A stretch of 64,000 nucleotides of DNA from positions 248,001 through 312,000 of the forward strand of contig NIVC01000364.1 in the NCBI GenBank assembly GCA_002269645.1, in the 5' to 3' direction. The translations under genes and the position numbers were made by a program. Under the pieces are notes generated by a model that was given only the letters and a program-made list of their open reading frames with translations, was not told the DNA's origin and made no database searches. This document shows positions 3,121 through 64,000 of this stretch, one piece after another (the stretch's first letter is position 1; the number at the start of each line of letters is the position of its first letter). This stretch comes from Macrostomum lignano (Eukaryota).

Positions 3121-4308
3121 CAGTCACTGATTTTGGTGTCCTGAAGCAAAATCCTTGATTTCCATTACGGGGTCACAAGGTGGGGGCTGGGGAAAAATCA
3201 ATGATTTGTCCCCCCCTAACAGCTTTTACTAGGAGGGGGGGGGGCACATGTCCTCCTGCCCCCCGGTGGTGACGCCTCTGATTTTAAGCAACCCATTTCA
3301 TATCGCCTAAACTTCACCAGTGTTAGGCATCGATAATGCAAATCTTAACTTCAGCTAACGGCTAAAGCGTTGGAATGAAAAAAAAGAAAAATATATAACT
3401 TAGCCAATGGTGTTAAATTTAGGTTTTGTGAAGGCGCCCACATGGCATCCGTGAATCTGAATTTTTACAAACAGTTTTGCTATGCTATGCAAATTACCTG
3501 TTACACAGTGTGCACCTCACATGACATTTGGTCTGGTTTAGCCCTTAGTTTGAAACCAAATACATTTGCGGTTAGAAAGTCTAAATCGAAGGGCCATTTA
3601 ACCCACTATTTACCTTCAGACACTGCGCGTGTGCTTCAGAGCAACTGCTCAGGCCAGACCAAAGGACGCCTTAAAGGTAAAACTTGACCGCAGGCCCAGT
3701 TTTGAGGAGCAGGAGCAGGAGAGGAGAGGGAGCGACATGTCGAGTTGTCAGTCAAAAAGCTGCTCAGGTCAGTTGGCGCCAATGATTATGCGGTGAGCAC
3801 CAGCCCCCCCCCCCGTTATCTCGCCTCGCCTCCGCTGGTCAGTCATCAGTAAATCATGCTGCTATCAACTAGTTTTATCTTCGGCAAACAAGATCAGACT
3901 GCGCTAGGGCATATCTGACAGACGCGTCCGATAGTCGCACATGAGCTGCTCAAGGCTGATTTGGATTTCAAGAAAAAAACGAGAGCTCTGAAGCTTTTTA
4001 TTCTCTTATCCTAAAGTTCATTTTTATCATTTGAATTCGGACTGACAGCAACATGAAATCCAGTTTGATTGCAGCCTACCGCGTCGTGAAACATTTGTGG
4101 CAAAAAAGTATCTTTGAATAGCAGAATCGGCAGAATTTGGCAATTCAAAGAGGCTGGCTCGCGGTTGATTCAAAAATGCACTGGGGGAGGAAGGGGCGTT
4201 CTGTGGCCACGAGCGCACGAAGGTCATCTGAAGGTCGTCTGCCAAACAGACTTGCTGTAATCTTATCATTAGCTGTAAGACATCATGAAATCTACTTTTA
4301 TTCAGTAA

Positions 4309-5621
4309 CTAGATATGGCACATGCCACCGCTGAACTCCCCTTTGACGCCGATGCTGCCTAGAAAATTTTGCAACCTCCCCAACGACGGTGTCTGCTGCG
4401 CCACTGACTGCTGAACATCCCGATTGATGTCGCCGCCGCCGCCGCCGCCGCTGTCATTGCTGTCGTGGCAAAAGAACTTCATGGCGTCCAGATTGCCAAG
4501 GAAGCTGGCGAACATGTTCGCGTCGAAACAGTCGAAGTCGTCTTCGATTCGAGGCTCCTGACTGCGGTGGCAGCGGTGCTGCTGCGCCTGCTGCCAGTAG
4601 CAGCAGCAGCTGCAGCTGCAATGGTAGGAGTAGCCGCCGGTGCTGTTCCAACCAGTTGGTGCCCAGTTTGACTGCTGCTCAGGCTCGGACTGAGGCTGCT
4701 CAAATCTGCGCTCTTTCAGTTCGGTTAGATGCTGTTGTTGTTGCTGCTGCTGTTGCTGCTGCTTCTGCTGCTGCTGCGACTTCTTCTTGCGTCTCGGCTG
4801 GTACTTGTAGCCGGGATGGTCAGTCAGATGTTGACGCTTCAGCCGTTCCGCCTCAAGCACAAAAGGGCGCTTCTCGGCGTCGCTCATTGACTTCCACTTG
4901 TCGCCTGGTAGTAGAATGTGGCGTGTGATTTTACACGTTTGGCTTGGTTGTAGCTGCGGTACAAAATGACCGGTGGCTCGCCTAGGCTGCTTCAATATAA
5001 TAATAATTGATTTCACCTGCCCCCTGGGCAGATGTGCAACCGACAGCTCAGCCGCAGCTATTGCGCGGCGCCTCTGAAGGCTGCGTACGGCTGTTCAGTC
5101 CAAGGACTGGGGGGTCGCCACACACCCTCAATTAACCCAGCTAATGCTGGCACCCATTAATTACAGCTGGGTGAACTGAAGCAATGCAGAGTTAAGTGTC
5201 TTGCTCAAGGACGCAAATTGTTCCGAGTGGGTCGAGAATCGAACCCCCGACCTTTCAGTCGCGAGTCTGACGCTCTAACCACTAGGCTACAACCCCCTAA
5301 TCCACTATGAAGGTCTCACAGTTCTGGAGAGTCCGGAGAATGTATCTCGCATCAATATCTACCCGTTAAGACCTGTTTATGCATAAGGGACTCACCCAAC
5401 AGCCGGCTGAGCTCCACATTGTGCACATCTGGATTGGCCTTGGACAGCTGCTTTCGCTCGGCTCTGGCCCACACCATGAACGGATTCATGGGCCTGGGAA
5501 TGTGATTCCTTCTGCGCCTCCTGCCGGCGGTGGCAACTACTGCCGGTGTGCTGCCGTCAACGCTACTGGCCGAAGTGCTGGGCCGGTCCCACAGGTATTC
5601 GCTGAAGTCCAAGCTGGCCAT
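4309..5621 (-). CDS. soxF: SoxF-type (Sox7/17/18-like) HMG-box transcription factor; exons 5621-5396 and 4904-4309
   Basis: HMG box [37 protein letters not shown]|[40 protein letters not shown]. Phase-1 intron inside the Gly of LG (G|GTGAG ... TACCAG|GC), the SoxF-type position. PolyQ tract. ATG at 5621 (the ORF track start is a GTG). SoxE cannot be fully excluded. Confidence 0.8.
4994..5297 (-). mobile_element. tRNA-derived CORE-type SINE in the Sox intron
   Basis: Minus strand: A-box TAGCCTAGTGG, B-box GGTTCGATTC, CORE-like segment CCTTGAGCAAGACACTTAACTCTGCATTGCTTCAGTTCACCCAGCTGTAA, 3' stem-loop CATCTGCC-CAGGG-GGCAGGTG and (ATT)n tail. Highly similar second copy at 60998-61280. Confidence 0.85.
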
Positions 5622-9052: not shown

Positions 9053-12000
9053 GGAACAACAACAAAATACGCTGTTAGCGTCACAAGGCGCGTCTCAAGG
9101 CCAGCAGGTCACGGACGAACGCCACGCCGCCAGCTGAATCTGGGGCGCCCGGGTCAGCTAGCAGGCAGTCGACGAATTAACGCTGAGTGCGGGCCTGCCC
9201 CCGCCGGTAGGTTGCCTGCAGGTCTGTCAGGACATCTTCGACGGCCTGGAACGCTCTCCACCGCACAGGAGCATCCTCGCGTGCATGGACTTCAAAGGAG
9301 CCTACGAAACGGTCTGGAAGGAAGGCCTCGTTGTGAAGATGACTCGAGTAAAGATCGACCAGAACACCATCGGCTGGACGGAAGCCTTCCTTTCCGACCG
9401 ACGCGCAAGAGTCCGCTTCGGGCACACCCTGAGCCGCCAGCGCGTCTTCCGAGAGGGACTCCCACAAGGCTCGGTCCTGGCGCCAACTCTCTGGAACATC
9501 TACGTGAATGACCTAGAGGAGGCAGTCACGACAGCAGCGCCGGACTGCGGCATCAGCCTCTACGCCGATGATTCGGCTGTCCTCAGCACCCAAGCCCTCA
9601 CTGGCGAGCTGCGGAGCCAGGATACAACCGGCACTCACTGAAAATCACCCTGAGTACCAGCAAGTGCAACTACTCAACATTCACGCTCGCCCCCAACGAG
9701 GTGAACGGCAAGCTCCGGGTCCCGCTCGAGCTAGCCGGCGAGCCACTCCAGTTTGAAGAACACCCGACCTTCCTGGGCCTCATCCTGGACTGCCAGCTGA
9801 ACTTCGCCCAGCACGCAGCCAACGTCTGCCGCCGCATGAGCCGACGCCGACGCGCTCTTGCCGACCTCGCAAACCGCGCGGTAGGAGCCACCCAGGAGGT
9901 GCTCCGGACGGCCTACCAGGCAACCATCCGCGCCGTGGCCGAATACGGATGCGGAGTCTGGGGAGCCAGCGCGGCACCGAGTACCAAACTGCTTATCGAA
10001 CAGCAACAGAACAGCTGCGCAAGAATCATCACCGGATGTATGCTCCCAACTCGAACCACGGAGCTGCTTCGGACGGCCAACCTCCCCCCCTTTGGCCACA
10101 CCATCCTGGAACGCGCCGCCTGCCTCCGAGAACGGGTGCTGCGCCTCCCGGAGGACGTCCCAGCACACCGGACTGCGGCCAGAGACACCACCAGCAGACT
10201 ACGAAACCGCGCCTACGAGAGCGCCCGCCGACAAGAAGAGGCAAATTTTAACGCGCTACTAGACAATGATTACAAGCGCCCTTTCCGCGGCTGCTGGCGG
10301 CGAATCGCGAGAGAAATCACCGGTCCCTGCGGCCTCGAAGACCGGCCCAGAGAGCCGTTCCCGCCACCGCCGCCCGACCTGGCACACCTCGCGCTCAACC
10401 GGTACAGCCAGACTTTCGACCTCACCCTCGCCGACGGCTGCGGCAGAGCAGTCCCGACGAGCGTCCGCCGCGACAGGGCGATGTCAGCTCTCGAGCAGCT
10501 AACACCCTGTGACATCGACGCGTGGACGGACGGCAGCGTCAAGGAGGGCATCCACGACGCATGGGGTGCCGCGGTAATCTGCACCCGCCTCTGGTGCCAA
10601 AAGATCACCGCCCCGGCTGGCCGGATCGCATGCAGCTTCCAGGCGGAGATGGTCGCGATCAGCGCCGCCCTCGACTACATTACTCAACTCCCGCCAGAGC
10701 ACGGCCTTACAGTGCGGATCCTCAGCGACTCCAAATCAGCACTCACGGCCCTCCAGAGCGGCCCCAGTAGGCAGGTCACCGCCGCCGGAAGCCGCTGCTG
10801 GGAGGTACTGGCCCACATGTCGCGCCCGTGCGACTTCGTCTGGGTCCCGGCCCACTGCGACGTCCCGGGCAACGAGCAAGCAGACCGCTGCGCCAACGAA
10901 GCTAGACGCGGCCAACAGCAGGACGAACCCATTACGCTGCAGGCCGCCAAGGCCGCCATCCGACGCGCGCGGTTCGCCCGCGACCAGGAACTGCTTGGAC
11001 GCCCCTGGCAACGACCACCACGACACCTGACCAGGAAAGAAACGGTGGCGATTAACCAACTCAGAGCCGGGTGCTCCACCCTGGCCGGGGCCACACGTCA
11101 CCGGGTCGGCCTGACTGAGAACGCCAGCTGTCCCGATTGCGGGGCGCCCGACACGGAGGAGCATATCATCCTTGAATGCCCACGCGGCGACGCCCTTCGG
11201 GCGAGCACTGAGGACGAGAGGGACATCCGCGACGACCCGGAGCGCCTTCTCGCCCTCCTTCGCAGGTTGGGGCGCCTCTGAGCGCCCTCCCCCCAGCTGC
11301 CAGCGGCAGCGTTGTGGGGCGGTGGAAGAAAAGAAGAAGAAGAAGCACCTCCTGCACCGGCTGTGGGCAGTACGTCGATCGGCGCGGATGATATGGCCTG
11401 CAAGCTGGAGTCGCCGACGGCGCAACAGGTTGCTTGGACTGACCACCGATACAATGCCGCGTTGGTCACTCGCTCGTAGCCGATCTTGAAGGCGGCGCGC
11501 AGCAGGCCAGCGTGCGCCGCGTCAACTTTTTGATCGAGCGAATCCACCAGCGTCCAGGTCTCGGCGTTGTACAACAGGACGGTCTCTATCACCGCCTGGA
11601 ACAACGCCGCCCTCTGGCGGTCAGGTAGGGCCTCACAGAACGAAAGGCAGCCCAGGTAAGCCTGCGGCGACGCCGCAAATCCTCGCGGACACCAGGAACC
11701 AGACCGCCGATATAGACGAACTGCTGACAACGCGGAAGCTCTGTCGCCTGTTCATCAGCGCCTCGGGACAAAATCGCAGCCTCGATTCCTGTCCGACACG
11801 CAGAGCACAACGGTTTTCTGCGTGTCGACCACCAGGCCGACACTCGCCGCAACAGCAACTAGCTTGTCTAGTTGTCGCTGGGCGCCCTCGACAGTTGAGG
11901 ACAGCAGGGCGAGATCGTCGGCGTAGCCAAGCACGCTGAGCCGCCTCTCCAGTTGACGTCGACCCACGCGTCGCCGCAACAGAAAGCCGTTGTCGTTGGT

Positions 12001-21410: not shown

Positions 21411-21531
21411 CTATTTATATACTCAATGAGTAAAATGGACAGGAATGACCTCACGAAAGCTTGCAGAATTTTTTAATTTGTGCTTAAAAATATTCTAAAA
21501 TTCTAATAAATAGTGTAATAACAATTTATGC

Positions 21532-21911
21532 ATGATGGTGTGCATTCCCTGTGTCATCCTGGCAGTGACGCCATTTACTCTTGCATTTTTCCACTTTCTC
21601 CTGCTGCCTCTGTTTAAGAGCAAGGGGAAAGCACCTGACAACAACAACAAGGATGTTGAAAAAGAGAAACCAGAAGATACTGCCAATGAGAAGAATTTAG
21701 AGAAAGAAAAAGCCATTGAGAATGCACCGCCTGCACCTGTGAGTCTTTTAAAGAAATTATTTAAAATGCGCAACTGTTTTGTCAACGTGGCCAGAAATTT
21801 ACATTGCAGGCTGAAGTTGAAGAGACCACGCCAGACACCAATGATGCTGCTAATGATGCTGACAATGCTGATACTGCAGTGGATGACACCACACATGACA
21901 AGTCTGAATAA
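21532..21911 (+). CDS. Small membrane-anchored protein, C18orf32/UPF0729-like (~102 aa); exons 21532-21738 and 21810-21911
   Basis: N-terminus MMVCIPCVILAVTPFTLAFFHFLLLPLF resembles the recalled MVCIPC(I/V)..P hydrophobic start of C18orf32. 71-bp intron CCT|GTGAGT...TTGCAG|GCT in phase 0. Acidic tail AEVEETTPDTNDAANDADNADTAVDDTTHDKSE*. Confidence 0.65.
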
Positions 21912-22404
21912 CTGGACTCAACTGGCATTAAAACAAACTGAAAATTGACGCATTTTTGTTTTTAGAAAAAAAGCTTTTACTTTGATTTAGTTGGCTATAT
22001 TGATTTTTTTAATTGGCATTTTTTTAAAAACGATGTAAAATTTCCCGTATTTAAGTTGCTTTTTTTAGTTCAAGACTTGACCAGTCAAAAAAATAAATTG
22101 AGAAATCTTTGTTCCTACTTTACAATTGTATTTTTACATAAACTGGCTTAATAGTTCATTTATTGGTGTCATAATAAATTAAATTTATCTAATAGAAGTG
22201 TAATAGAAATACAGATTTTATTTAATTCATTGTAATAAACAGGAACATTAAAATTAATTATTTTCAGCTTCAGCAATTAGTGCTTAACGAAAGTAAAAAC
22301 AAGAAATCTACAAGTAGCAGACAAAACGAGGCAGGTAGCCCCTCATCAGAGCTTTCTTCGAGACCCGCCAGCAACTGGAAACCGGCTGAGGCCACTCTGA
22401 GCAA

Positions 22405-26532
<4,128 letters not shown>

Positions 26533-30381: not shown

Positions 30382-31921
30382 TCAGTTACGATCGGTGGCA
30401 ATCGCGCACACGGCGCACAGCTGCAGAAACTCGTCGGCGCCATCAGTCAGGGCCCGGTCGGCCAGGCCGATCTGCTCCAACACCCGCGGCCTCACCTGGT
30501 CAGTCAGCAGGTGGTCGTGCAGCTGGTTGAGCACCTGCTCGCCTGAGTAGCCGTCTAGCAGCAGGTTGCGCACCGCCTCGGTGACTGCGTCAGTTCGGCG
30601 CTGGTCAAGGGCGCCAGTCAGGACGGCGAAACGATCGGGCGGCACCGCGCCGGACATTTCGTGCACCAGGCCGACGGTGAGCTGCTGGCCCGGGCCGGCG
30701 TACCTGCCAAGGCGGGTTGGATGAGAAAATGCACGGTTTCGATTCGAATCGGGGGGGGGAGCTGAGGTGGCGCCCACTGAAGAATCGGGGGGAGCTGAGA
30801 TGGCGCCCACTGAAGAATCGGGGGGGGAGCTGAGATGGCGCCCACTGAAGAATCGGGGGGGGGGAGCTGAGATGGCGCCCACTGAAGAATCGGGGGGATC
30901 TGAGGCGGCGCACACTGAAGAATCGGGGGGGAGCTGAGATGGCGCCCACTGAAGAATCGGGGGGGGGAGCTGAGATGGCGCCCACTGAAGAATCGGGGGG
31001 GGGAGCTGAGATGGCGCCCACTGAAGAATCGGGGGGGGGGAGCTGAGATGGCGCCCACTGAAGAATCGGGGGGATCTGAGGCGGCGCACACTGAAGAATC
31101 GGGGGGGGAGCTGAGATGGCGCCCACTGAAGAATCGGGGGGATCTGAGGCGGCGCACACTGAAGAATCGGGGGGGGGGAGCTGAGATGGCGCCCACTGAA
31201 GAATCTGGAGCTGAGGTGGCGCCCACTGAAGAATCGGGGATATCTGAGGCGGCGCACACTGGCCAAACGCACAAACAGTATAACAACCAGGGCCCAGCCT
31301 TACCTGGCAGCGCTGTGCAAATAAGTGAGCGCCTTGCGCAGGTCGCCGCCGCTGGCGTCAACCAAAGCCCTCAGAAACTCGTCGGTGGCGGTCAGCCGTT
31401 CGGCGGAGCAAATCTCGCCGACTCGTTTGAGCAGAGCAGCCTGCGGCAGCGGTTTAAATCTGAACTTGGCGCACCGGCTGCTAATGGGCGGGATGATTCT
31501 GGACACATAGTTGCAGATCAGGCAGAACCGGGTGGTCTTGGCGCACACTTCCATTGTGCGGCGGAGGGCTGACTGTGCCGCCGTGGTCATGTTGTCGGCC
31601 TCGTCTAGGATGATCAGCTTCAGCGGCGGGCACGCTTTGCCGCTGGGTGGGATAAGAGGGTTGGAGATACGCCGCGTAGGATACTACTTACTGTGCAGTT
31701 ATGAGTAGCATTTTATGAGTTTTTTAGGCGAAAAGAAAAATTGATAAAAGTCGACTCACTCCGGTCGTTTAGCGTTGGCGGTCAGCTGGGCGAAAGTTTT
31801 CACTTTGTCGCGAATGACGCCGATGCCGCGCTCGTCGGAGGCGTTCAGCTCCAATAGGCGATCGCGGAGCAGGTCCGGGCCGAACAGGTCTCTGGGGTAT
31901 GGGTAGATGGATAGATAGATG

Positions 31922-31979
<58 letters not shown>

Positions 31980-32022
31980 TGGATAGATAGATAGATAGAT
32001 AGATAAAAAGATAGATAGATAA

Positions 32023-32067
<45 letters not shown>

Positions 32068-32078
32068 GAGATAAAAAC

Positions 32079-32112
<34 letters not shown>

Positions 32113-32140
32113 TGATAGATAGATAGATAGATAGATAGAT

Positions 32141-32192
<52 letters not shown>

Positions 32193-32208
32193 AAAGATAG
32201 ATAGATAA

Positions 32209-32276
<68 letters not shown>

Positions 32277-32292
32277 AAAGATAGATAGATAA

Positions 32293-32325
<33 letters not shown>

Positions 32326-32536
32326 GAGATAAAAACATAGATAGATAGATAGATAGATAGATAAAAAGATAGACAGATAAATAGATAGATAGATAAATAC
32401 ATAGATAGACAGACACACAGACAGACAGACAGACAGACACACAGACACACAGACAGACACACAGACAGACACACAGACACACAGACACACAGACAGACAG
32501 ACAGACAGACACACAGACAGACAGACAGACAGACAC

Positions 32537-32567
<31 letters not shown>

Positions 32568-33008
32568 CACAGACAGACACACAGACAGACACACAGACAC
32601 ACAGACAGACAGACAGACAGACACACAGACAGACAGACAGACAGACACACAGACAGACACAGACAGACAGACACACAGACAGACAGACAGACAGACACAC
32701 AGACAGACAGACACACAGACACACAGACAGACAGACAGACAGACACACAGACAGCAGTCCCACCTGGCCAGGGCCAGGGCGGCGGAGGTCTTGCCGGTGC
32801 CGGGGCTGCCGTAGAACAGCAGGTTTGGCAGGTCGGCTCCCTCGGCCGCGCACTTCTTCAGCACCGCCACCGCCTCCTCCTGGTGCGACACCTCGTCCAG
32901 AGTGGCTGGCCGGTACTTCTCCACCCAGGGCGTCGGACGTTTGGTCGACGACGCCGAGCGAGGCTTTGCGTCCGATTTGGAGGCGGCGAAGTTGAGCAGA
33001 AAGTTCTC
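30382..33008 (-). CDS. RFC4: Replication factor C subunit 4 (RFC 37 kDa); exons 33008-32764, 31891-31760, 31642-31304, 30703-30382; initiator ATG not present in these exons
   Basis: [23 protein letters not shown] (Walker A), [67 protein letters not shown]. All three introns GT-AG and phase-consistent. Confidence 0.95.
30750..31258. repeat. Minisatellite filling RFC4 intron 3, ~32-bp unit GAGCTGAGATGGCGCCCACTGAAGAATCGGGGG
   Basis: Visible array between donor 31303 and acceptor 30704. Confidence 0.95.
31903..32755. repeat. Compound (GATA)n/(GACA)n microsatellite filling RFC4 intron 1
   Basis: Visible; occupies nearly the whole intron 31892-32763. Confidence 0.98.
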
Positions 33009-33061
33009 CTGCAACCGAATAGTTTGCGAAAGGATCCAGAGTATTAGAAACAACTAAGAAA

Positions 33062-33742
33062 CTATTAGACAGAAACTATTAGACAGGCAATGGACTAGCA
33101 GATCCCATCTATTAGACAGGCAATGGACTACCAGACCACATCTATTAGACAGGCAATGGACTAACAGACCCCATCTATTAGACAGGAAATAGACTACAAG
33201 ACCCCATCTATTAGACAGGCAATGGACTAACAGACCCCATCTATTAGACAGGCAATGGACTAACAGACCCCATCTATTAGACAGGCAATGGACTAACAGA
33301 CCCCATCTATTAGACAGGAAATAGACTACAAGACCCCATCTATTAGACAGGCAATGAACTAACAGACCCCATCTATTAGACAGGCAATAGACTAACAGAC
33401 CCCATCTATTAGACAGGCAATGGACTAACAGACCCCATCTATTAGACAGGCAATGGACTAACAGACCCCATCTATTAGACAGGAAATAGACTACAAGACC
33501 CCATCTATTAGACAGGCAATGGACTAACAGACCCCATCTATTAGACAGGCAATAGACTAACAGACCCCATCTATTAGACAGGCAATGGACTAACAGACCC
33601 CATCTATTAGACAGGCAATGGACTAACAGACCCCATCTATTAGACAGGAAATAGACTACAAGACCCCATCTATTAGACAGGCAATGGACTAACAGACCCC
33701 ATCTATTAGACAGGCAATGGACTAGCAGACCCTATCTACTGG
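33062..33742. repeat. Minisatellite, 33-bp unit TATTAGACAGGCAATGGACTAACAGACCCCATC, between CNDP2 and RFC4
   Basis: About 20 visible units. Confidence 0.96.
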
Positions 33743-34512
33743 ACTAGAAAATCATGACATATCTATTCGTGTAAAAATAATTTAATATCGAAGTCGCACA
33801 GCATAATATATATAAATATTGAATAGAATTAGTGACTTCGAATATAGCAATTGGGTGCCTCCAAAATTATTGGCATAACAGGAATTTTTGAATCAGTTAA
33901 ATACGGTTTAATGATGTCACGAATTTTCTAATTTCAAATCAATAAACGAATTTCAGAAAAAATGAAACTTTTAGAAGAGCTAACTAAACTAATAGAGTGG
34001 GAGCTATTTAGTGGCGAATAATGTAAGGGGCGCTGATTGTGAAAATGATAAAAGTAAAAAGACAAATCGAACAAGGACGCGAATTTAGCAAGATTTAATT
34101 TAAAAATTACCGGAATTGTCAACAAAAGAAAGATTTTCTGATTTTTACAGATGATTAAAATACAAGCTTATTCACGGGTCAAAATTGATTTCTTATAATA
34201 ATAATGACTATTTACGGCAATAGGAGTTTTACGAGAGTAAAAGAGGATTATAGTTCATTAAAACTGAATGGGAATCGAATGGGAACAAAAAATCAAATCG
34301 AAATTAAATGTCAAAAAGGGTCAAAGGTCACACAGGGTCAGGGGTCAAAGAAGATCAAAGGAAGACCAAACAAGCCCAAAGGTCAAACGTGGTCGAATTT
34401 CAAACAAGGTCAAAGGTCAAGCGAAGACCAAATGGCAAAATGGCGAAAAAATCAAACGAGACCAAAGGTCAAAGGTCAAACAAAGTCACTTTACGCTAGC
34501 TAGGCCAGCCAA

Positions 34513-37500
34513 TCAAATCTGGCCGACCTCGTGCAGGTAGGCGGCCATCAGCTTAGTACCCTGGATGTAATTCCTCTTGGACAGTTTCTCATTCTGGCTG
34601 TGAGCTCCGTCGTCAGCCTGGCCCATGGGCAGCAGCAGCACATTCTTGCCCGTGCTCTCCTGCAGGCTAAGCGTCACCGGGATGCTGCCGCCCTCCCTAG
34701 TCATGTCCGGCTCAACTCCGTACACAGTTTTCGTAGCCTTGGCGGCGGCCTGAAAGTGCGGATGCTGGAAATCGCTGAACCAGTGCCGGCCCCCATGCTG
34801 AGGAATGATACGGCACTGGTTGGGGCTGCCCCGCTCCCGGAACAGCCGTTCGCAATAGGCCACCACTTTGGCGTTGACCTCATCCGGCGTCTGGTTGGGC
34901 ACGATTCGAATGCTGAACTTGCCAATCACTCGGCGGGGTATCACCGTCTTGGCGCCTTCGCCGTAGAAAGCGCCCTCGATGCCGTGGACGCTGAGCGAGG
35001 GGAAACGCCAGCGGTGCTGCAGCGTCTTGGCCTGGAAATTGAAAGGCGTGGCGAATGAACTCTAAAGCGGCTTACTTATGGCGGGAGGCGGAGCCCACTG
35101 AAGACTCTGAGGAGGTGGCGCCCACTGAAGGCTTGGAGGTGGCGCCCACCAAAGGCTTGGAGGTGGCGCCCACTGAAGACCCGGTGGGAAGAGATGACGA
35201 CTGGGTAGGCCAGTTGGGGGCTATAACTCGATGAAGACCCCCGACTTACCTTAGAAGCGTGCAGCAGGCCGTGCAGGCCATTGTCAGCCTTGAACTCATC
35301 AACACTGAAGTCCATCCTATCGTAGAGAGCCTCCTCCTCAGGAGTGAGAGGCGCCACATTCTCGTCGATGCTGTCGATAAGAATTTTTCCGTCCTTGTCG
35401 GCCAGCCGGCCCAGAAACCAGACCAGATCGTTCATAGCCTCGGGAACTGAGCCGCCGAACACGCCGCTGTGCAGATCCTTGGCTGCGCAGGACACTTCTA
35501 GAAAGAAATAGCAGATTCCGCGTAGGCCGTAGGTCAGGCACGGCTTGTCCTTGCCTAGCCAATAATTGTCGCTAATGCACACCAGGTCGACTCCGCTAAG
35601 GAAGCATTTGCGTTCTTTCACTAGCAGTTGGTCGAGGCCCTCCGAGCCGCTCTCTTCCATGGCTTCCAGACAGAACTTCAGGTTCACCGGCAGTTCAATG
35701 CCCTCCTGCGGGATCGAGACAATATTGTGACTTCAGGGAGGCCCTCTTGTGGGGCTTGTGTGTGATTTCTAGGTGCGGTTCTTGGCGAATGATTGAGGGG
35801 CGATTCTTGGTGGATGATTGAGGTGCGATTCTTGGCGAATGATTGAGGGGCGATTCTTAATGGATGATTGAGGTGCGATTCTTGGCGAATGATTGAGGGG
35901 CGATTCTTGGTGGATGATTGAGGTGCGATTCTTAATGGATGATTGAGGGGCGATTCTTAATGGATGATTGAGGGGCGATTCTTGGTGGATGATTGAGGTG
36001 CGATTCTTAATGGATGATTGAGGGGCGATTCTTAATGGATGATTGAGGGGCGATTCTTGGTGGATGATTGAGGTGCGATTCTTGGCGAATGATTGAGGGG
36101 CGATTCTTAATGGATGATTGAGGGGCGATTCTTGGTGGATGATTGAGGTGCGATTCTTGGCGAATGATTGAGGGGCGATTCTTAATGGATGATTGAGGGG
36201 CGATTCTTGGTGGATGATTGAGGTGCGATTCTTGGCGAATGATTGAGGGGCGATTCTTAATGGATGATTGAGGGGCGATTCTTGGTGGATGATTGAGGTG
36301 CGATTCTTGGCGAATGATTGAGGGGCGATTCTTAATGGATGATTGAGGGGCGATTCTTGGTGGATGATTGAGGTGCGATTCTTGGCGAATGATTGAGGGG
36401 CGATTCTTAATGGATGATTGAGGTGCGATTCTTGGCGAATGATTGAGGGGCGATTCTTAATGGATGATTGAGGGGCGATTCTTAATGGATGATTGAGGGG
36501 AGATTCTTAATGGATGATTGAGAGGGTGATTCTTGGTGGATGGTTGAGGGGGCGATTCTTAATGGATGATTGAGGGGCAATTCTTGGTGGATGATTGAGG
36601 GGCGATTCTTAATGGATGATTGAGGGGCGATTCTTGGCGAATGATTGAGGGGCGATTCTTAATGGATGATTGAGGGGGTGATTCTTAATGGATGGTTGAG
36701 GGGGCGATTCTTGGCGAATGATTGAGGGGCGATTCTTAATGGATGGTTGAGGGGGCGATTCTTAATGGATGGTTGAGGGGGCGATTCTTAATGGATAATT
36801 GAGGGGCGATTCTTAATGGATGATTGAGGGGCGATTCTTAATGGATGATTGAGGGGCTATTCTTAATGGATGCTTGAGGGGCGATTCTTAATGGATGATT
36901 GAGGGGGCGATTCTTGTTGGATGATTGAGGGGCGATTCTTAGGGGATGCTCAAGGGGGCACTTAGGCGATTATGAGTTGAAAGGCGATTTTCAGGTAACG
37001 CTTGAGGGCGATTCACAGAAGAATTGATCAATAGACGATTATACGAAAATACAAAATTTCCGACTTCACTCTCAACTCGGACAAAAGGGGGGGGCATTTT
37101 TAAATCGCTAACACTAAAAAGCGAACCTCTTTGTAAGCCTCGACGGCATTGAGCCAGCCCAGCACTGGCCCCTTGTCGTCGCTGGAGCCTCGGCCGTAGA
37201 GGTTCCCATTGCGCTCGGTGAGCTCGAACGGCTCAGTGTCCCAGCCGTCCTCTTTGGCAGCCGGTTGAACGTCCAGATGGCCGTAGATGAGCAACGTCTT
37301 CTTCTTGTCGCTGTTGGCGTTGCTGGGCAGATCCGCCAGTAGGCAGGGCGGCAGCTGCAGCTTGGTGCCGTCCGTTAGTTTCTAGAAATGGATACAAGTT
37401 GTAGAAAACTCAGATTTTGAACTCCTTTGTAGCTAATCAGATTATCTTAACTTTAACTTATCGATTCCACCAGTTTTACATTCCAAACTCCGGATTTCCC

Positions 37501-37881
37501 GATCCTAAACCCCAAATTTCCCGATCCTAAACCCCAAATTTCCCGATTCTTAACTCCGGATTCCCCAATTCCAAACTCTGGATTCCCCAATTCCAAACTC
37601 CGGATTCCCCAATTCCAAACACCGGATTCCCCAATTCCAAACACCGGGGGAACTTGAACCTTGCCGCTCACCTGTTCGCCCAAAGGCGCCAATCGAACGG
37701 AGGCGCCCAGCGACTTCAGCTCATCAGCGGCCCGTTCCACCATGCGAACAACTTCGCCGCGATGATCTGGCCAGGCGCTGACTGACCTGACAGCGACAGC
37801 GTCGCGCAGTCGGTCGATGTAGCGCGACTGGTTGGCGTCGATGCGGCTGAATATGCGCTGCAGGTCGGCGTTAGCTGACAT
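34513..37881 (-). CDS. CNDP2: Cytosolic non-specific dipeptidase (M20, CNDP2-like), ~479 aa; exons 37881-37672, 37381-37127, 35705-35250, 35031-34513
   Basis: [94 protein letters not shown]. All introns phase 0, GT-AG. Confidence 0.97.
35086..35180. repeat. Short tandem repeat GGAGGTGGCGCCCACTGAAG in CNDP2 intron 3
   Basis: About 4 units; the core is shared with the RFC4 intron 3 array. Confidence 0.8.
35772..36950. repeat. Minisatellite filling CNDP2 intron 2, 25-bp unit GCGATTCTT(AA/GG)TGGATGATTGAGGG
   Basis: Visible array with higher-order alternation of variants. Confidence 0.97.
37490..37650. repeat. Degenerate ~21-bp repeat CCGGATTCCCCAATTCCAAACT in CNDP2 intron 1
   Basis: Visible degenerate array. 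Confidence 0.8.
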
Positions 37882-37954
37882 TTTGATAACGGAATTGAAG
37901 CTGCAATGCAGTGTCGGGCTTCTATAGGATTCGCTCTTCATTAGTTTTTTTCAA

Positions 37955-38790
37955 AAGGTGTCTGGGAAATGCTGAGTAAGTTTGGGTTGTCTGGGAGAAT
38001 TCTTAGTAAGTTTGGGTGTCTGGGAGAATTCTTAGTAAGTTTGGAGTGTGTCTGGGAGAATTCTTAGTAAGTTTGTGGTGTCTGGGAGAATTCTTAGTAA
38101 GTTTGGGTTGTCTGGGAGAATTCTTAGTAAGTTTGGGTTGTCTGGGAGAATTCTTAGTAAGTTTGGAGTGTGTCTGGGAGAATTCTTAGTAAGTTTGGAG
38201 TGTGTCTGGGAGAATTCTTAGTAAGTTTGGAGTGTGTCTGGGAGAATTCTTAGTAAGTTTGGAGTGTGTCTGGGAGAATTCTTAGTAAGTTTGGAGTGTG
38301 TCTGGGAGAATTCTTAGTAAGTTTGGGTTGTCTGGGAGAATTCTTAGTAAGTTTGGGTTGTCTGGGAGAATTCTTAGTAAGTTTGGGTTGTCTGGGAGAA
38401 TTCTTAGTAAGTTTGGGTTGTCTGGGAGAATTCTTAGTAAGTTTGGAGTGTGTCTGGGAGAATTCTTAGTAAGTTTGGAGTGTGTCTGGGAGAATTCTTA
38501 GTAAGTTTGGAGTGTGTCTGGGAGAATTCTTAGTAAGTTTGGAGTGTGTCTGGGAGAATTCTTAGTAAGTTTGGAGTGTGTCTGGGAGAATTCTTAGTAA
38601 GTTTGGAGTGTGTCTGGGAGAATTCTTAGTAAGTTTGGAGTGTGTCTGGGAGAATTCTTAGTAAGTTTGGAGTGTGTCTGGGAGAATTCTTAGTAAGTTT
38701 GGGTTGTCTGGGAGAATTCTTAGTAAGTTTGGGGTGTCTGGGAGAATTTTTAGTAAGTTTGGAGTATGTCTGGGAGAATTCTTAGTAACT
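37955..38790. repeat. Minisatellite, 30-32-bp unit GTCTGGGAGAATTCTTAGTAAGTTTGG(AGTGT/GTT), in the CNDP2/cyclophilin divergent promoter region
   Basis: Visible array. Confidence 0.97.
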
Positions 38791-39511: not shown

Positions 39512-40216
39512 ATGCAGCAACTGACCGCGATCCTGCTACTTGTCCTGTACGCATCGGCCCCGGCTGCAGCAATGCGAGACAAGGAGGAGGAAGAGCCCAA
39601 GCCCACCTACAAGGTCACGGAGGAGGTCTGGTTCGAGGTCGAAATCAAAGATCTGGACGGACCGGGCGACGATTTTACTGGCAAGTTTACAATTGGCGTG
39701 TTCGGCGAGGACGCACCGGCCACTGCGATGAACTTTGTTGCCTTGGCTAAGGGTTGGCGATCGGCCAAGGGCGACGTGCTGCACTACAAGGGCACGCCTG
39801 TGCACCGGGTTGTGCCGGACTTTGTAGTCCAGATGGGCGACGTGACCCGCAAAGACGGCACCGGCGGCGCCAGCATCTTCGGCAAGTCGTTCAACGACGA
39901 GCCGTTCATCTTGTCGCATCGAAGCCCTGGCTGGGTTGCCATGGCGAATCACGGCCCGGACACCAACGGCTCCCAGTTCTACATCACCCTAACCAAGGCT
40001 CGCTGGCTAGACAAGCATCACGTAGTGTTCGGCAAAATCCTCCGCGGTTTTGACGTTGTCAACACCATCGGCGAGGTGCCAACCAATTCGAAGAATGCCC
40101 AACCGAAGCGCAAGATACGCATCATTGACTGCGGCGTTGTCAGCATCAAGAAGCCGTACGTGCTGAGCAAGGACGAACTTGACGCCACAACTGACATAAT
40201 GAGCCGAAGCGAATAA
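39512..40216 (+). CDS. PPIB: Secretory-pathway cyclophilin (PPIB/PPIC-like), intronless, 234 aa
   Basis: Signal peptide MQQLTAILLLVLYASAPAAA; VTEEVWFEV, IGVFGEDAP.TAMNF, YKGTPVHRVVPDFVVQMGD, DGTGGASIFG, GWVAMANHGPDTNGSQFYIT, WLDKHHVVFGK. Confidence 0.93.
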   Translation: MQQLTAILLLVLYASAPAAAMRDKEEEEPKPTYKVTEEVWFEVEIKDLDGPGDDFTGKFTIGVFGEDAPATAMNFVALAKGWRSAKGDVLHYKGTPVHRVVPDFVVQMGDVTRKDGTGGASIFGKSFNDEPFILSHRSPGWVAMANHGPDTNGSQFYITLTKARWLDKHHVVFGKILRGFDVVNTIGEVPTNSKNAQPKRKIRIIDCGVVSIKKPYVLSKDELDATTDIMSRSE

Positions 40217-62672: not shown

Positions 62673-64000
62673 ATGGACGATATTCATCGCAATGCCCTGC
62701 TGAAGGCTCGCTGCGTGCTGGTCAGTCAGCTGGTAGCGGACAATAAGCTTTGGGGCCTGCTACTAGAGAGAAAGGTGTTCACCAAGCCAATGCTGGAGCG
62801 AATCCTCTGCCAAGGAACTCCGCACGAGCGACGCCAACAACTGATGGACGACCTGCCTAGACGCGGTCCGGACGCATTCGGCCAGTTTCTGGGCATCCTT
62901 CGCGACACCAGACAGCAGGACCTGGCGGACTATCTTGACGGCATGGACCGGCACCTCAGGCACGGCCATCCGCTGCCGTCGGAGCCGCGGCCGCAGCCCA
63001 GACCGCCATCGGGGCCGAGTCAACCGGCGCAGCCATCGCAGCCGCAGGATGATCCGTCTCGAAGGCCGTCAGTCGACCGTTCAGTCAGTCGAATAGGCGT
63101 GACCAACCAACCCAACATCCCCGATGACGTTCTGTCTGTACAGGAGGTAAGACGTTACTTAGCTGCCTACTGTATTATGTTATTTGCCTTTAGTTTATTC
63201 GTACTCACCAAGGGGGAGGGGGATTCTCTGGTGTCATCTGTTGAAGGTGCCGACGGCGTCGGGGTGATGACAGAATGCTTGAGAGACTAGATGAGAATGT
63301 CCAGCAGTTGAGGTTTGCCCACTGTCGAGGCTTGATCAGTGACATCAGAGAAACTCGCAACAGGGTGTTCATAGTCACCTGGTGCCAGCTGTTGAAGGTC
63401 CAGAAGCTCCGCCTGGGTGAAGACCAGCGACCAGTGAAGTCAGAGCTGAGTCAGGCACATTTGGTCGACGTGCTGATGAAATTTGGAGGCTTGGCAAGGC
63501 TGCACTGAGGCACAGGGGTGTACTGAATACACTGGCGCTTATGGAAAAAACCGACCTTCTGGCAGAATCGTCGAATATCTCGACGGACCGGAGGGCTGGC
63601 GACTTGATTCTTGTTTAATAAGAGGGTGCGCAACAAAATAGTTTTCTGTGCCTGCGTTGCTTCGGTGCAGCAAAAAATGTCTGTTGTTAACATTTCACAT
63701 TGAATCCTGAATCCTCTGCAGGTACTGGAACGCCATGAGGATGGCCTGGAAGAGTTGAACTTTCACACCTGCGGCATCATTGACAGTACTGAGCTGATGC
63801 CTCAACCGGTGACGCAGCAGCACCTGACGGAGAAGAGCAAGAATGATTGGGAATTCACATACCAGCTCCGCTCCAATCCGAAGGGTCTGCTGCTCATCAT
63901 TAGCAATCGAGATTTTGTTAAGAAGAGTAAACGAACCGGAACGGAAGTCGACTGCGAGAACCTGACTCGCGTGTTCAAGAACCTTGGCTATGAGCTCTAT
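62673..64000 (+). CDS. CARD-containing initiator caspase (caspase-2/9-like), partial; exons 62673-63146 and 63722 to beyond 64000
   Basis: CARD MDDIHRNALLKARCVLVSQL...LLERKVFTKPMLERI...QLMDDLPRRGPDAFGQFLGILRDTRQQDLADYL. Phase-0 intron GAG|GTAAGA...CTGCAG|GTA. p20 start YQLRSNPKGLLLIISNRDF...RTGTEVDCENLTRVFKNLGY. Catalytic QACRG-type motif is outside the window. Confidence 0.9.

What the first reader, a model, noticed from the sequence alone, without database searches (positions are those of the whole stretch)
32764..34512. RFC4 lacks a genomic start codon: candidate for an AUG supplied by a trans-spliced leader
Seen: the first RFC4 coding exon starts at acceptor TTCGGTTGCAG|GAG AAC TTT CTG (33008; ENFL...) and contains no ATG; the ORF-track start at 33053 is TTG. 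Reading by eye, I found no ATG|GT (plus-strand ACCAT) between here and the CNDP2 stop. Established: human RFC4 begins M-QAFL, so only the Met seems to be missing; flatworm spliced leaders end in AUG, which can act as the initiator Met when in frame. Inference: SL trans-splicing at 33009 gives M-ENFL exactly in frame, so this essential replication gene would depend on the SL for its start codon.
Basis: partly seen in the sequence, partly recalled or inferred. Interest (0 to 1): 0.78.

Follow-up and report, generated by a model that had tools for sequence, protein, structure and literature searches.

The report
Spliced-leader-supplied start codon for flatworm RFC4
The Macrostomum lignano RFC4 gene has no start codon in its own DNA and almost certainly gets its AUG from the spliced leader RNA joined to its first exon, a mechanism already well known in flatworms.

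Summary
The window is Macrostomum lignano (identical to Mlig_3_7 scaffold NIVC01000364.1). RFC4 lies on the minus strand in four coding exons. Exon 1 (33008-32764) follows a TTGCAG acceptor, contains no ATG in any frame, and has an in-frame TAG 15 codons upstream.

- The M. lignano spliced leader (SL) ends in ATG.
- Published tables flag this gene (Mlig028746) as TRANSSPLICED.
- GenBank calls its CDS 5'-partial.
- Adding Met gives M-E-N-F-L, which aligns exactly with the invariant M-x-x-F-L start of 13 orthologues.
- The next ATG in the mRNA is 432 nt downstream, past the Walker A and DEAD motifs.

One extra clue came from the assembly. A homeologous copy reads TGCATG|GAGAAC where the window reads TTGCAG|GAGAAC. 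The same SL-suffix "scars" occur at two other trans-splice sites. They fit the documented polishing of the assembly with RNA-seq, and so indirectly record the SL-ATG|GAG junction.

No raw junction reads were available.

SL-AUG initiation has been known since Cheng et al. 2006, so this is an ordinary new example.

The parts
32764..33008 (-). RFC4 coding exon 1 ([10 protein letters not shown]...ALALA, includes Walker A GSPGTGKT). Contains no ATG in any frame.
33009..33014 (-). Trans-splice acceptor TTGCAG (AG at 33010-33009). Matches the M. lignano SL-acceptor motif [T/C]TNCAG. This CAG occupies the position of the ancestral ATG.
33006..33007 (-). Second AG of a tandem CAG|GAG| acceptor. The GenBank CDS starts at AAC (33005). 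Use of this site would also keep the SL AUG in frame (M-N-F-L).
   Evidence: inference
33054..33056 (-). In-frame TAG that closes the reading frame upstream of exon 1. There is no ATG between it and the acceptor.
33009..34512 (-). Outron / intercistronic region between the CNDP2-like stop and the RFC4 acceptor. It is 1504 nt, of which 850 nt is tandem repeat. The last 45 nt are identical in all three genomic copies.
33076..33738 (-). 33-bp tandem repeat, about 20 copies. It holds 19 of the 24 upstream ATGs and all 32 formal phase-0 ATG..|GT mini-exon candidates.
31760..31891 (-). RFC4 coding exon 2
31304..31642 (-). RFC4 coding exon 3. It holds the first genomic ATG of the mRNA (Met145, in DEADNM).
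30382..30703 (-). RFC4 coding exon 4, including the stop codon
31892..32763 (-). Intron 1, almost entirely (TCTA)n/(TCTG)n microsatellite. This repeat is why the mechanical ORF runs through it.
34513..37900 (-). Upstream same-strand M20 dipeptidase (CNDP2-like) gene, also trans-spliced. Its acceptor TTGCAG is at 37906-37901 and its own ATG at 37881. The SL AUG is out of frame there and opens a 10-codon uORF.

Best explanation
RFC4 of Macrostomum lignano is made from a pre-mRNA whose first coding exon begins at a trans-splice acceptor (TTGCAG|GAG, exon start 33008). The 35-nt spliced leader, which ends ...UUGCAUG, is joined there. Its 3'-terminal AUG becomes codon 1, giving M-ENFLLNF... and a 346-aa clamp-loader subunit.

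The acceptor CAG occupies the same three nucleotides that hold the start codon in orthologues. Trans-splicing therefore restores a start codon that the gene no longer encodes.

The gene is probably the downstream member of a two-gene operon with the CNDP2-like peptidase. In that case the 1.5-kb repeat-rich spacer is the outron.

What is shown and what is inferred:
- Shown here: the absence of a genomic ATG, the reading frame, the orthologue alignment and the acceptor motif.
- Taken from published annotation: that the gene is SL trans-spliced.
- Inferred: the exact junction, translation from the SL AUG, and operon membership.
For: - Organism and SL sequence.
- No ATG in exon 1, and an in-frame TAG upstream.
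- Acceptor fits [T/C]TNCAG.
- Mlig028746.g1/g5/g6 (RFC4) flagged TRANSSPLICED in PMC5816591 Supplementary Table 2.
- GenBank CDS is 5'-partial and starts at the acceptor in all three copies.
- Independent ML2-based UniProt models start ENFLL (33008) or LQENFLL. The latter starts at TTG 33014, which is exactly where SL/genome similarity (TTGCA) ends.
- M-E-N-F-L aligns with the invariant M-x-x-F-L of 13 metazoan RFC4 proteins.
- The next ATG in any frame is 432 nt downstream, after Walker A and DEAD.
- Homeolog L005 reads TGCATG|GAGAAC. CNDP2 in L005 reads TTGATG|C. The 101-aa gene reads TGCATG|ATGGTG in the window and L005. In each case the variant bases equal the SL suffix in ungapped register and fade with distance from the junction.
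- The assembly was polished with RNA-seq.
- SL AUG as initiator is established in flatworms (Cheng et al. 2006, cited) and noted for Macrostomum.
- Operon: same strand, both genes trans-spliced, 1504 nt apart minus 850 nt of repeat = 654 nt, below the published 1-kb criterion.
Against: - No raw SL-junction read or transcript contig for this gene could be retrieved.
- The GenBank protein starts at N (AAC, 33005), not E (GAG, 33008). The annotated transcript therefore starts 1-3 nt downstream of CAG|. The exact junction is not settled, and the tandem GAG| acceptor may be used instead or as well.
- 32 in-frame ATG..|GT mini-exons exist upstream.
- One assembly copy (L005) shows a genomic ATG at the junction. 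If that is real, that copy would be SL-independent.
- Translation from the SL AUG has not been shown in M. lignano.
Confidence: 0.87

Rival explanations
1. A cis-spliced upstream mini-exon supplies the ATG. An example is ATGGGGTCT|GTTAGT from the 33-bp tandem repeat, which would give M-G-S-E-N-F-L.
For: There are 32 phase-0, stop-free ATG..|GT combinations upstream, 13 of them with a GTTAGT donor.
Against: - All lie in a satellite-like repeat whose copy number differs between the three gene copies.
- The donors do not fit the GT[G/A]AG consensus.
- Published annotation marks the gene as trans-spliced with its 5' end at the acceptor.
- Orthologues start M-x-x-F-L with no extra residues.
Confidence: 0.03
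2. The missing ATG is an assembly error. The true genomic sequence would be ...TGCATGGAGAAC, as in homeolog NIVC01001207.1 (L002/L005), and the gene has an ordinary start codon.
For: One of three assembly copies reads ggtgcATGgagAAC in frame.
Against: - Two of three copies read TTGCAG.
- UniProt models from the separate ML2 assembly start LQENFL or ENFL, never M.
- The L005 variant is a 4-nt block identical to the SL 3' hexamer in ungapped register.
- The same kind of SL-suffix substitution is seen at two other trans-splice sites. At CNDP2 the resulting ATG is out of frame and has no use.
- The assembly was polished with RNA-seq. The direction of error is therefore SL into genome, not the reverse.
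Confidence: 0.05
3. Translation starts without the SL AUG, either at a non-AUG codon in exon 1 (for example CUG, codon 4) or at the first genomic AUG (Met145).
For: Non-AUG initiation exists in eukaryotes. No translation data are available for this gene.
Against: - On a trans-spliced mRNA the SL AUG is the first AUG, is in frame, and sits at the conserved Met position.
- Starting at Met145 removes Walker A and the DEAD box.
- Flatworm SL AUGs are functional initiators (Cheng et al. 2006, cited).
Confidence: 0.03

Closest known systems
Flatworm SL 3'-terminal AUG used as initiator methionine (Cheng, Cohen, Ndegwa & Davis 2006, J Biol Chem 281:733; 'slORFs' of slORFfinder, PMC9851317)
   Same: The SL ends in AUG. 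The AUG is in frame with an ORF that has no AUG of its own. The protein's N-terminus matches orthologues only if the SL Met is used. [quoted passage not shown] In Echinococcus granulosus, 4 of 8 listed cDNAs require it.
   Different: The species is different: a free-living macrostomorph. Use of the SL AUG has been remarked on there but, in the papers searched, not catalogued gene by gene. RFC4 itself is not named as an example in the literature I could search.
M. lignano SL trans-spliced genes and operons (Wudarski 2017; Grudniewska 2018; Ustyantsev & Berezikov 2021)
   Same: The gene is listed as TRANSSPLICED. The acceptor fits [T/C]TNCAG. It is a conserved, proliferation-related gene, the class reported to be enriched among trans-spliced genes. 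The repeat-adjusted distance to the upstream trans-spliced gene is below 1 kb.
   Different: None of the text retrieved from those papers discusses start-codon donation. GenBank simply labels such CDSs 'partial'.
Nematode SL1/SL2 trans-splicing
   Same: Outron removal, operon resolution, and an AG acceptor without an upstream cis donor.
   Different: Nematode SLs do not end in AUG and do not normally supply the start codon (own knowledge).

Membership tests
SL-AUG-dependent (slORF) flatworm genes | Host SL RNA ends in AUG immediately 5' of its donor site | tested here: met
   The organism was identified as M. lignano. The published SL ends ...TTGCATG and is followed by a GTAAG donor. No SL RNA gene lies in the window.
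SL-AUG-dependent (slORF) flatworm genes | The gene's first coding exon is an SL trans-splice acceptor in vivo | tested here: met
   Met through published, read-based annotation: TRANSSPLICED flag and a 5'-partial GenBank CDS at the acceptor. Also supported by the SL-suffix scar TGCATG|GAGAAC in a homeolog. Raw reads were not seen here.
SL-AUG-dependent (slORF) flatworm genes | SL AUG is in frame with the main ORF | tested here: met
   SL plus exons translates to MENFLL...ATDRN with no stop. It is also in frame if the tandem GAG| acceptor is used.
SL-AUG-dependent (slORF) flatworm genes | No alternative AUG that could give a functional protein | tested here: met
   No ATG in exon 1 or exon 2 in any frame. 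The next ATG is 432 nt downstream, at Met145, past Walker A and DEAD.
SL-AUG-dependent (slORF) flatworm genes | N-terminus homologous to orthologues from residue 1 when the SL Met is added | tested here: met
   M1, F4 and L5 are invariant across 14 sequences.
SL-AUG-dependent (slORF) flatworm genes | Translation actually initiates at the SL AUG | not testable with these tools
   Needs ribosome profiling, N-terminal proteomics or a reporter assay.
M. lignano operon (Ustyantsev & Berezikov criteria) | Adjacent same-strand genes, downstream gene trans-spliced, repeat-adjusted spacer below 1 kb | tested here: met
   1504 nt minus 850 nt of TRF repeats = 654 nt. The upstream gene is on the same strand, and its annotated 5' end lies at a TTGCAG acceptor.
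M. lignano operon (Ustyantsev & Berezikov criteria) | Co-transcription on a single pre-mRNA | not testable with these tools
   Needs reads spanning the spacer, or nascent-RNA data.

The most novel reading that the evidence does not exclude
The ancestral RFC4 start codon was itself converted into the trans-splice acceptor. The genomic CAG sits on the three nucleotides that are ATG in orthologues, and TTGCAG differs from the SL 3' end TTGCATG by a single T. A one-base change could therefore have swapped a cis start codon for an acceptor that the SL then 'heals' exactly. Because the SL 3' end resembles the acceptor consensus [T/C]TNCAG, this could be a general, nearly neutral route by which conserved (neoblast-enriched) flatworm genes become obligately dependent on trans-splicing.
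Probability: 0.15. Interest if true: 0.4.

Novelty: new member of a known kind. Interest (0 to 1): 0.22.

Why it matters
It matters mainly for annotation. This RFC4 copy, and by extension other M. lignano genes labelled 'partial' in GenBank, may be complete genes whose Met codon lies in the SL RNA. Annotation pipelines should add it.

It also means this essential clamp-loader subunit cannot be made without SL trans-splicing. That fits the reported enrichment of trans-splicing among conserved, stem-cell-related genes, but it adds no new mechanism.

The by-product may be more useful in practice. Mlig_3_7 appears to carry SL-derived base substitutions at trans-splice acceptors. These destroy AG acceptors and create spurious ATGs, which can mislead gene models and promoter or 5'-end design for transgenesis.

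Tried and rejected
- Second homology search with the 60-aa N-terminus, meant to pull out transcript-derived proteins: it found no candidates, a limit of the word index.
The 90% identity cluster has no Logan (RNA-seq assembly) member. No transcript contig with the junction could therefore be obtained.
- Search for an SL RNA gene or SL 3' part in the window: none within 3 mismatches.
- Scan of the window for SL-suffix matches of 5 nt or more: too noisy on its own. It did lead to the 21529-21534 scar, which was then confirmed by comparing the copies.
- The best non-Macrostomum hit, P0002, was checked as a possible flatworm relative. It is an ordinary M-D-A-F-L RFC4 on a Logan contig with a 77-nt leader, and is not informative.
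- A constant off-by-one in the GenBank 5' ends was considered, to explain why the CDS starts at N. It is not consistent across RFC4, CNDP2 and the 101-aa gene, so it was rejected.
- The Wasik et al. 2015 paper was not held. Gene-ID and gene-name searches of main texts found nothing specific.

Full report
**What the window is.** The RFC4-like exons translate to a protein 100% identical to Macrostomum lignano entries A0A1I8FY93 and PAA84688.1. The window matches scaffold NIVC01000364.1 of assembly Mlig_3_7 (GCA_002269645.1) with 0 mismatches over 14.6 kb. M. lignano is a free-living flatworm with SL trans-splicing.

**Checking the observation.** RFC4 lies on the minus strand.
- A spliced alignment of the GenBank protein gives four coding exons: 33008-32764, 31891-31760, 31642-31304 and 30703-30382. 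All have canonical GT/AG borders.
- Exon 1 follows ...attcggttgcag| and begins GAG AAC TTT CTG.
- Exon 1 has no ATG in any frame.
- The reading frame is closed 15 codons upstream by TAG (33056-33054). The mechanical ORF therefore starts at TTG 33053.
- That ORF also runs through intron 1, but only because the intron is a (TCTA)n/(TCTG)n microsatellite.
- The 1504 nt between the upstream gene's stop and the acceptor hold 24 ATGs, none followed directly by GT.

One caveat applies. Allowing ATG plus whole codons before a GT gives 32 formal candidates. All lie in the 33-bp tandem repeat at 33076-33738: 13 copies of ATGGGGTCT|GTTAGT and 19 copies ending ...CCT|GTCTAA. Their donors do not fit the species' GT[G/A]AG consensus. 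The repeat's copy number also differs between the three gene copies.

**Evidence that the AUG comes from the spliced leader.**
- The M. lignano SL is CGGTCTCTTACTGCGAAGACTCAATTTATTGCATG. It ends in ATG and is followed by a GTAAG donor in the SL RNA gene (PMC8629364).
- The top motif at M. lignano trans-splice acceptors is [T/C]TNCAG. The site here is TTGCAG.
- Supplementary Table 2 of Grudniewska et al. 2018 lists Mlig028746.g1/g5/g6 as RFC4 with the flag TRANSSPLICED and length 1283. In that annotation the flag comes from SL-containing RNA-seq reads, trimmed and mapped to transcript starts.
- GenBank labels all three copies 'partial', with the CDS starting at the acceptor.
- Joining SL-ATG to 33008 gives an open frame, MENFLLNF...ATDRN, of 346 aa.
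- In an alignment with 13 metazoan RFC4 proteins, M1, F4 and L5 are invariant. Orthologues begin M-[Q/H/D]-A-F-L. The SL Met therefore lands exactly on the ancestral start position, and the genomic CAG of the acceptor occupies the three nucleotides that are ATG elsewhere.
- After the SL AUG, the next ATG in any frame is 432 nt downstream, at Met145. That lies behind Walker A (residues 68-75) and the DEAD box (140-143), so no functional protein could start there.

**An unexpected indirect record of the junction.** The assembly holds three homeologous copies: the window (equivalent to L003), L001/L004 on NIVC01002307.1, and L002/L005 on NIVC01001207.1. In L005 the six bases before the exon read TGCATG instead of TTGCAG. 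This puts an in-frame ATG in the DNA.

This looks like an artefact rather than an allele, for four reasons.
- The change is a block of four adjacent substitutions that reproduces the last six bases of the SL in ungapped register.
- The same thing happens at two other trans-splice sites.
  - The CNDP2-like gene reads TTGCAG|C in the window but TTGATG|C in L005. The ATG created there is out of frame and serves no purpose.
  - A 101-aa membrane-protein gene reads TGCATG|ATGGTG in the window and L005, but TTCCTG| in L004.
- The substituted bases always equal the SL base at that offset. They fade with distance from the junction: positions -2 and -3 change first, -5 last.
- Within 45 nt on either side, these are the only differences between the copies.

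Wudarski et al. 2017 state that the assembly was polished with Pilon using Illumina DNA reads and RNA-seq mapped by STAR. Reads that overhang a few bases into the SL would produce exactly this pattern. My inference is that these are polishing scars. For RFC4 the scar records mRNA reading ...TGCATG|GAGAAC, which places the junction at 33008.

UniProt models from the separate ML2 assembly point the same way. They start ENFLL (33008) or LQENFLL. The latter starts at 33014, exactly where SL and genome stop being alike (TTGCA).

**What remains unsettled.**
- The GenBank protein starts at N (AAC, 33005). The annotated transcript therefore starts 1-3 nt downstream of CAG|. The sequence is a tandem acceptor, CAG|GAG|. 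Use of the second AG would give M-N-F-L and is also in frame. A constant coordinate offset does not explain this, because the CNDP2 and 101-aa gene starts sit exactly on their junctions.
- No raw junction reads or transcript contigs could be retrieved.
- Translation from the SL AUG is inferred from work in other flatworms.

**How it most likely works.** The CNDP2-like M20 peptidase gene lies upstream on the same strand (37900-34513).
- Its annotated 5' end also sits at a TTGCAG acceptor (37906-37901), and it has its own ATG 19 nt further on.
- There the SL AUG is out of frame and opens a 10-codon uORF that overlaps the real start.
- The spacer to RFC4 is 1504 nt. Of this, 850 nt is tandem repeat, leaving 654 nt. 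That is under the 1-kb repeat-adjusted limit used to call M. lignano operons.

The likely scheme is a bicistronic pre-mRNA. The spacer acts as the outron. The SL is spliced to 33008, and the ribosome initiates at the SL AUG 32 nt from the cap. Of the three trans-splice sites examined in this neighbourhood:
- one needs the SL AUG (RFC4);
- one has it in frame next to its own ATG (the 101-aa gene);
- one has it out of frame (CNDP2).

This spread is in line with the roughly 28% in-frame rate reported for Schistosoma mansoni.

**Comparison with what is known.** Use of the flatworm SL's terminal AUG as initiator Met was shown by Cheng et al. 2006. In S. mansoni more than 40 cDNAs require it. It has also been reported in Echinococcus, formalised as 'slORFs', and noted for Macrostomum SLs. 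RFC4 in M. lignano meets every sequence-level criterion of this class (see the membership table). I found no paper that names this gene as an example.

**Verdict.** The new points are that this gene has no usable AUG of its own, and that the Mlig_3_7 assembly appears to carry SL-derived scars at trans-splice acceptors.

Noticed in passing
window 21529-21534 (+); L005 9995-10000 (RFC4) and L005 about 3136-3141 (CNDP2); L004 just upstream of the CDS start at 22146 (minus strand of the locus): Mlig_3_7 carries SL-suffix 'scars' at trans-splice acceptors. The bases just upstream of the exon are replaced, in ungapped register, by the SL 3' end (TGCATG, or partially ..ATG / ..TG). This destroys the AG and creates a spurious ATG. 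It was seen at all three trans-splice sites compared between homeologous copies. It fits Pilon polishing with RNA-seq reads.
   Followed up: yes
window 21535-21738 and 21810-21911 (+): Two-exon gene for a 101-aa protein with a hydrophobic N-terminus (MVCIPCVILAVTPFTLAFFHFLLL...) and an acidic tail. It has no Pfam match. Its own ATG is the first base of the trans-spliced exon, so the SL AUG would add a second Met in frame.
   Followed up: partly
window 37879-37906 (-): The CNDP2-like gene is trans-spliced at TTGCAG|C. The SL AUG is out of frame and opens a 10-codon uORF ([10 protein letters not shown]) that overlaps the gene's own ATG at 37881. The GenBank CDS is nevertheless annotated as 5'-partial from 37899.
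   Followed up: partly
window 33005-33011 (-): Tandem acceptor CAG|GAG|. The GenBank RFC4 protein starts at N (33005), whereas the UniProt models and the L005 scar point to 33008. Alternative trans-splice sites 3 nt apart are possible.
   Followed up: partly
window 31904-32754; 33076-33738; 34306-34473; 22547-23603; about 37990-38400: Dense tandem repeats in introns and spacers: (TCTA/TCTG)n fills RFC4 intron 1; a 33-bp unit repeated about 20 times sits in the outron; degenerate 17-bp units follow the CNDP2 stop; a 24-bp unit (..AAGCTAATCTATTAGCATGAAATG..) is repeated about 40 times downstream of the SRF-type gene start; a roughly 30-bp unit lies upstream of CNDP2. Copy numbers differ between the homeologous copies.
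   Followed up: no
window 9701-11281 (+): A GC-rich 526-aa ORF with an RNase H domain (Pfam E = 7e-9), probably a retroelement fragment.
   Followed up: no
window 39512-40216 (+); 22405 onward (+); 62673-63290 (+); 4309-5016 (-): Other genes in the window: a single-exon 234-aa cyclophilin-type PPIase divergent from CNDP2; an SRF-type MADS-box gene starting at 22405; a CARD-domain ORF; an HMG-box ORF.
   Followed up: no
RFC4 mRNA (SL plus exons 1-3): There is no ATG in any frame for 432 nt after the SL AUG. For sequence of this composition a handful would be expected. This may be chance, or selection against competing starts.
   Followed up: no
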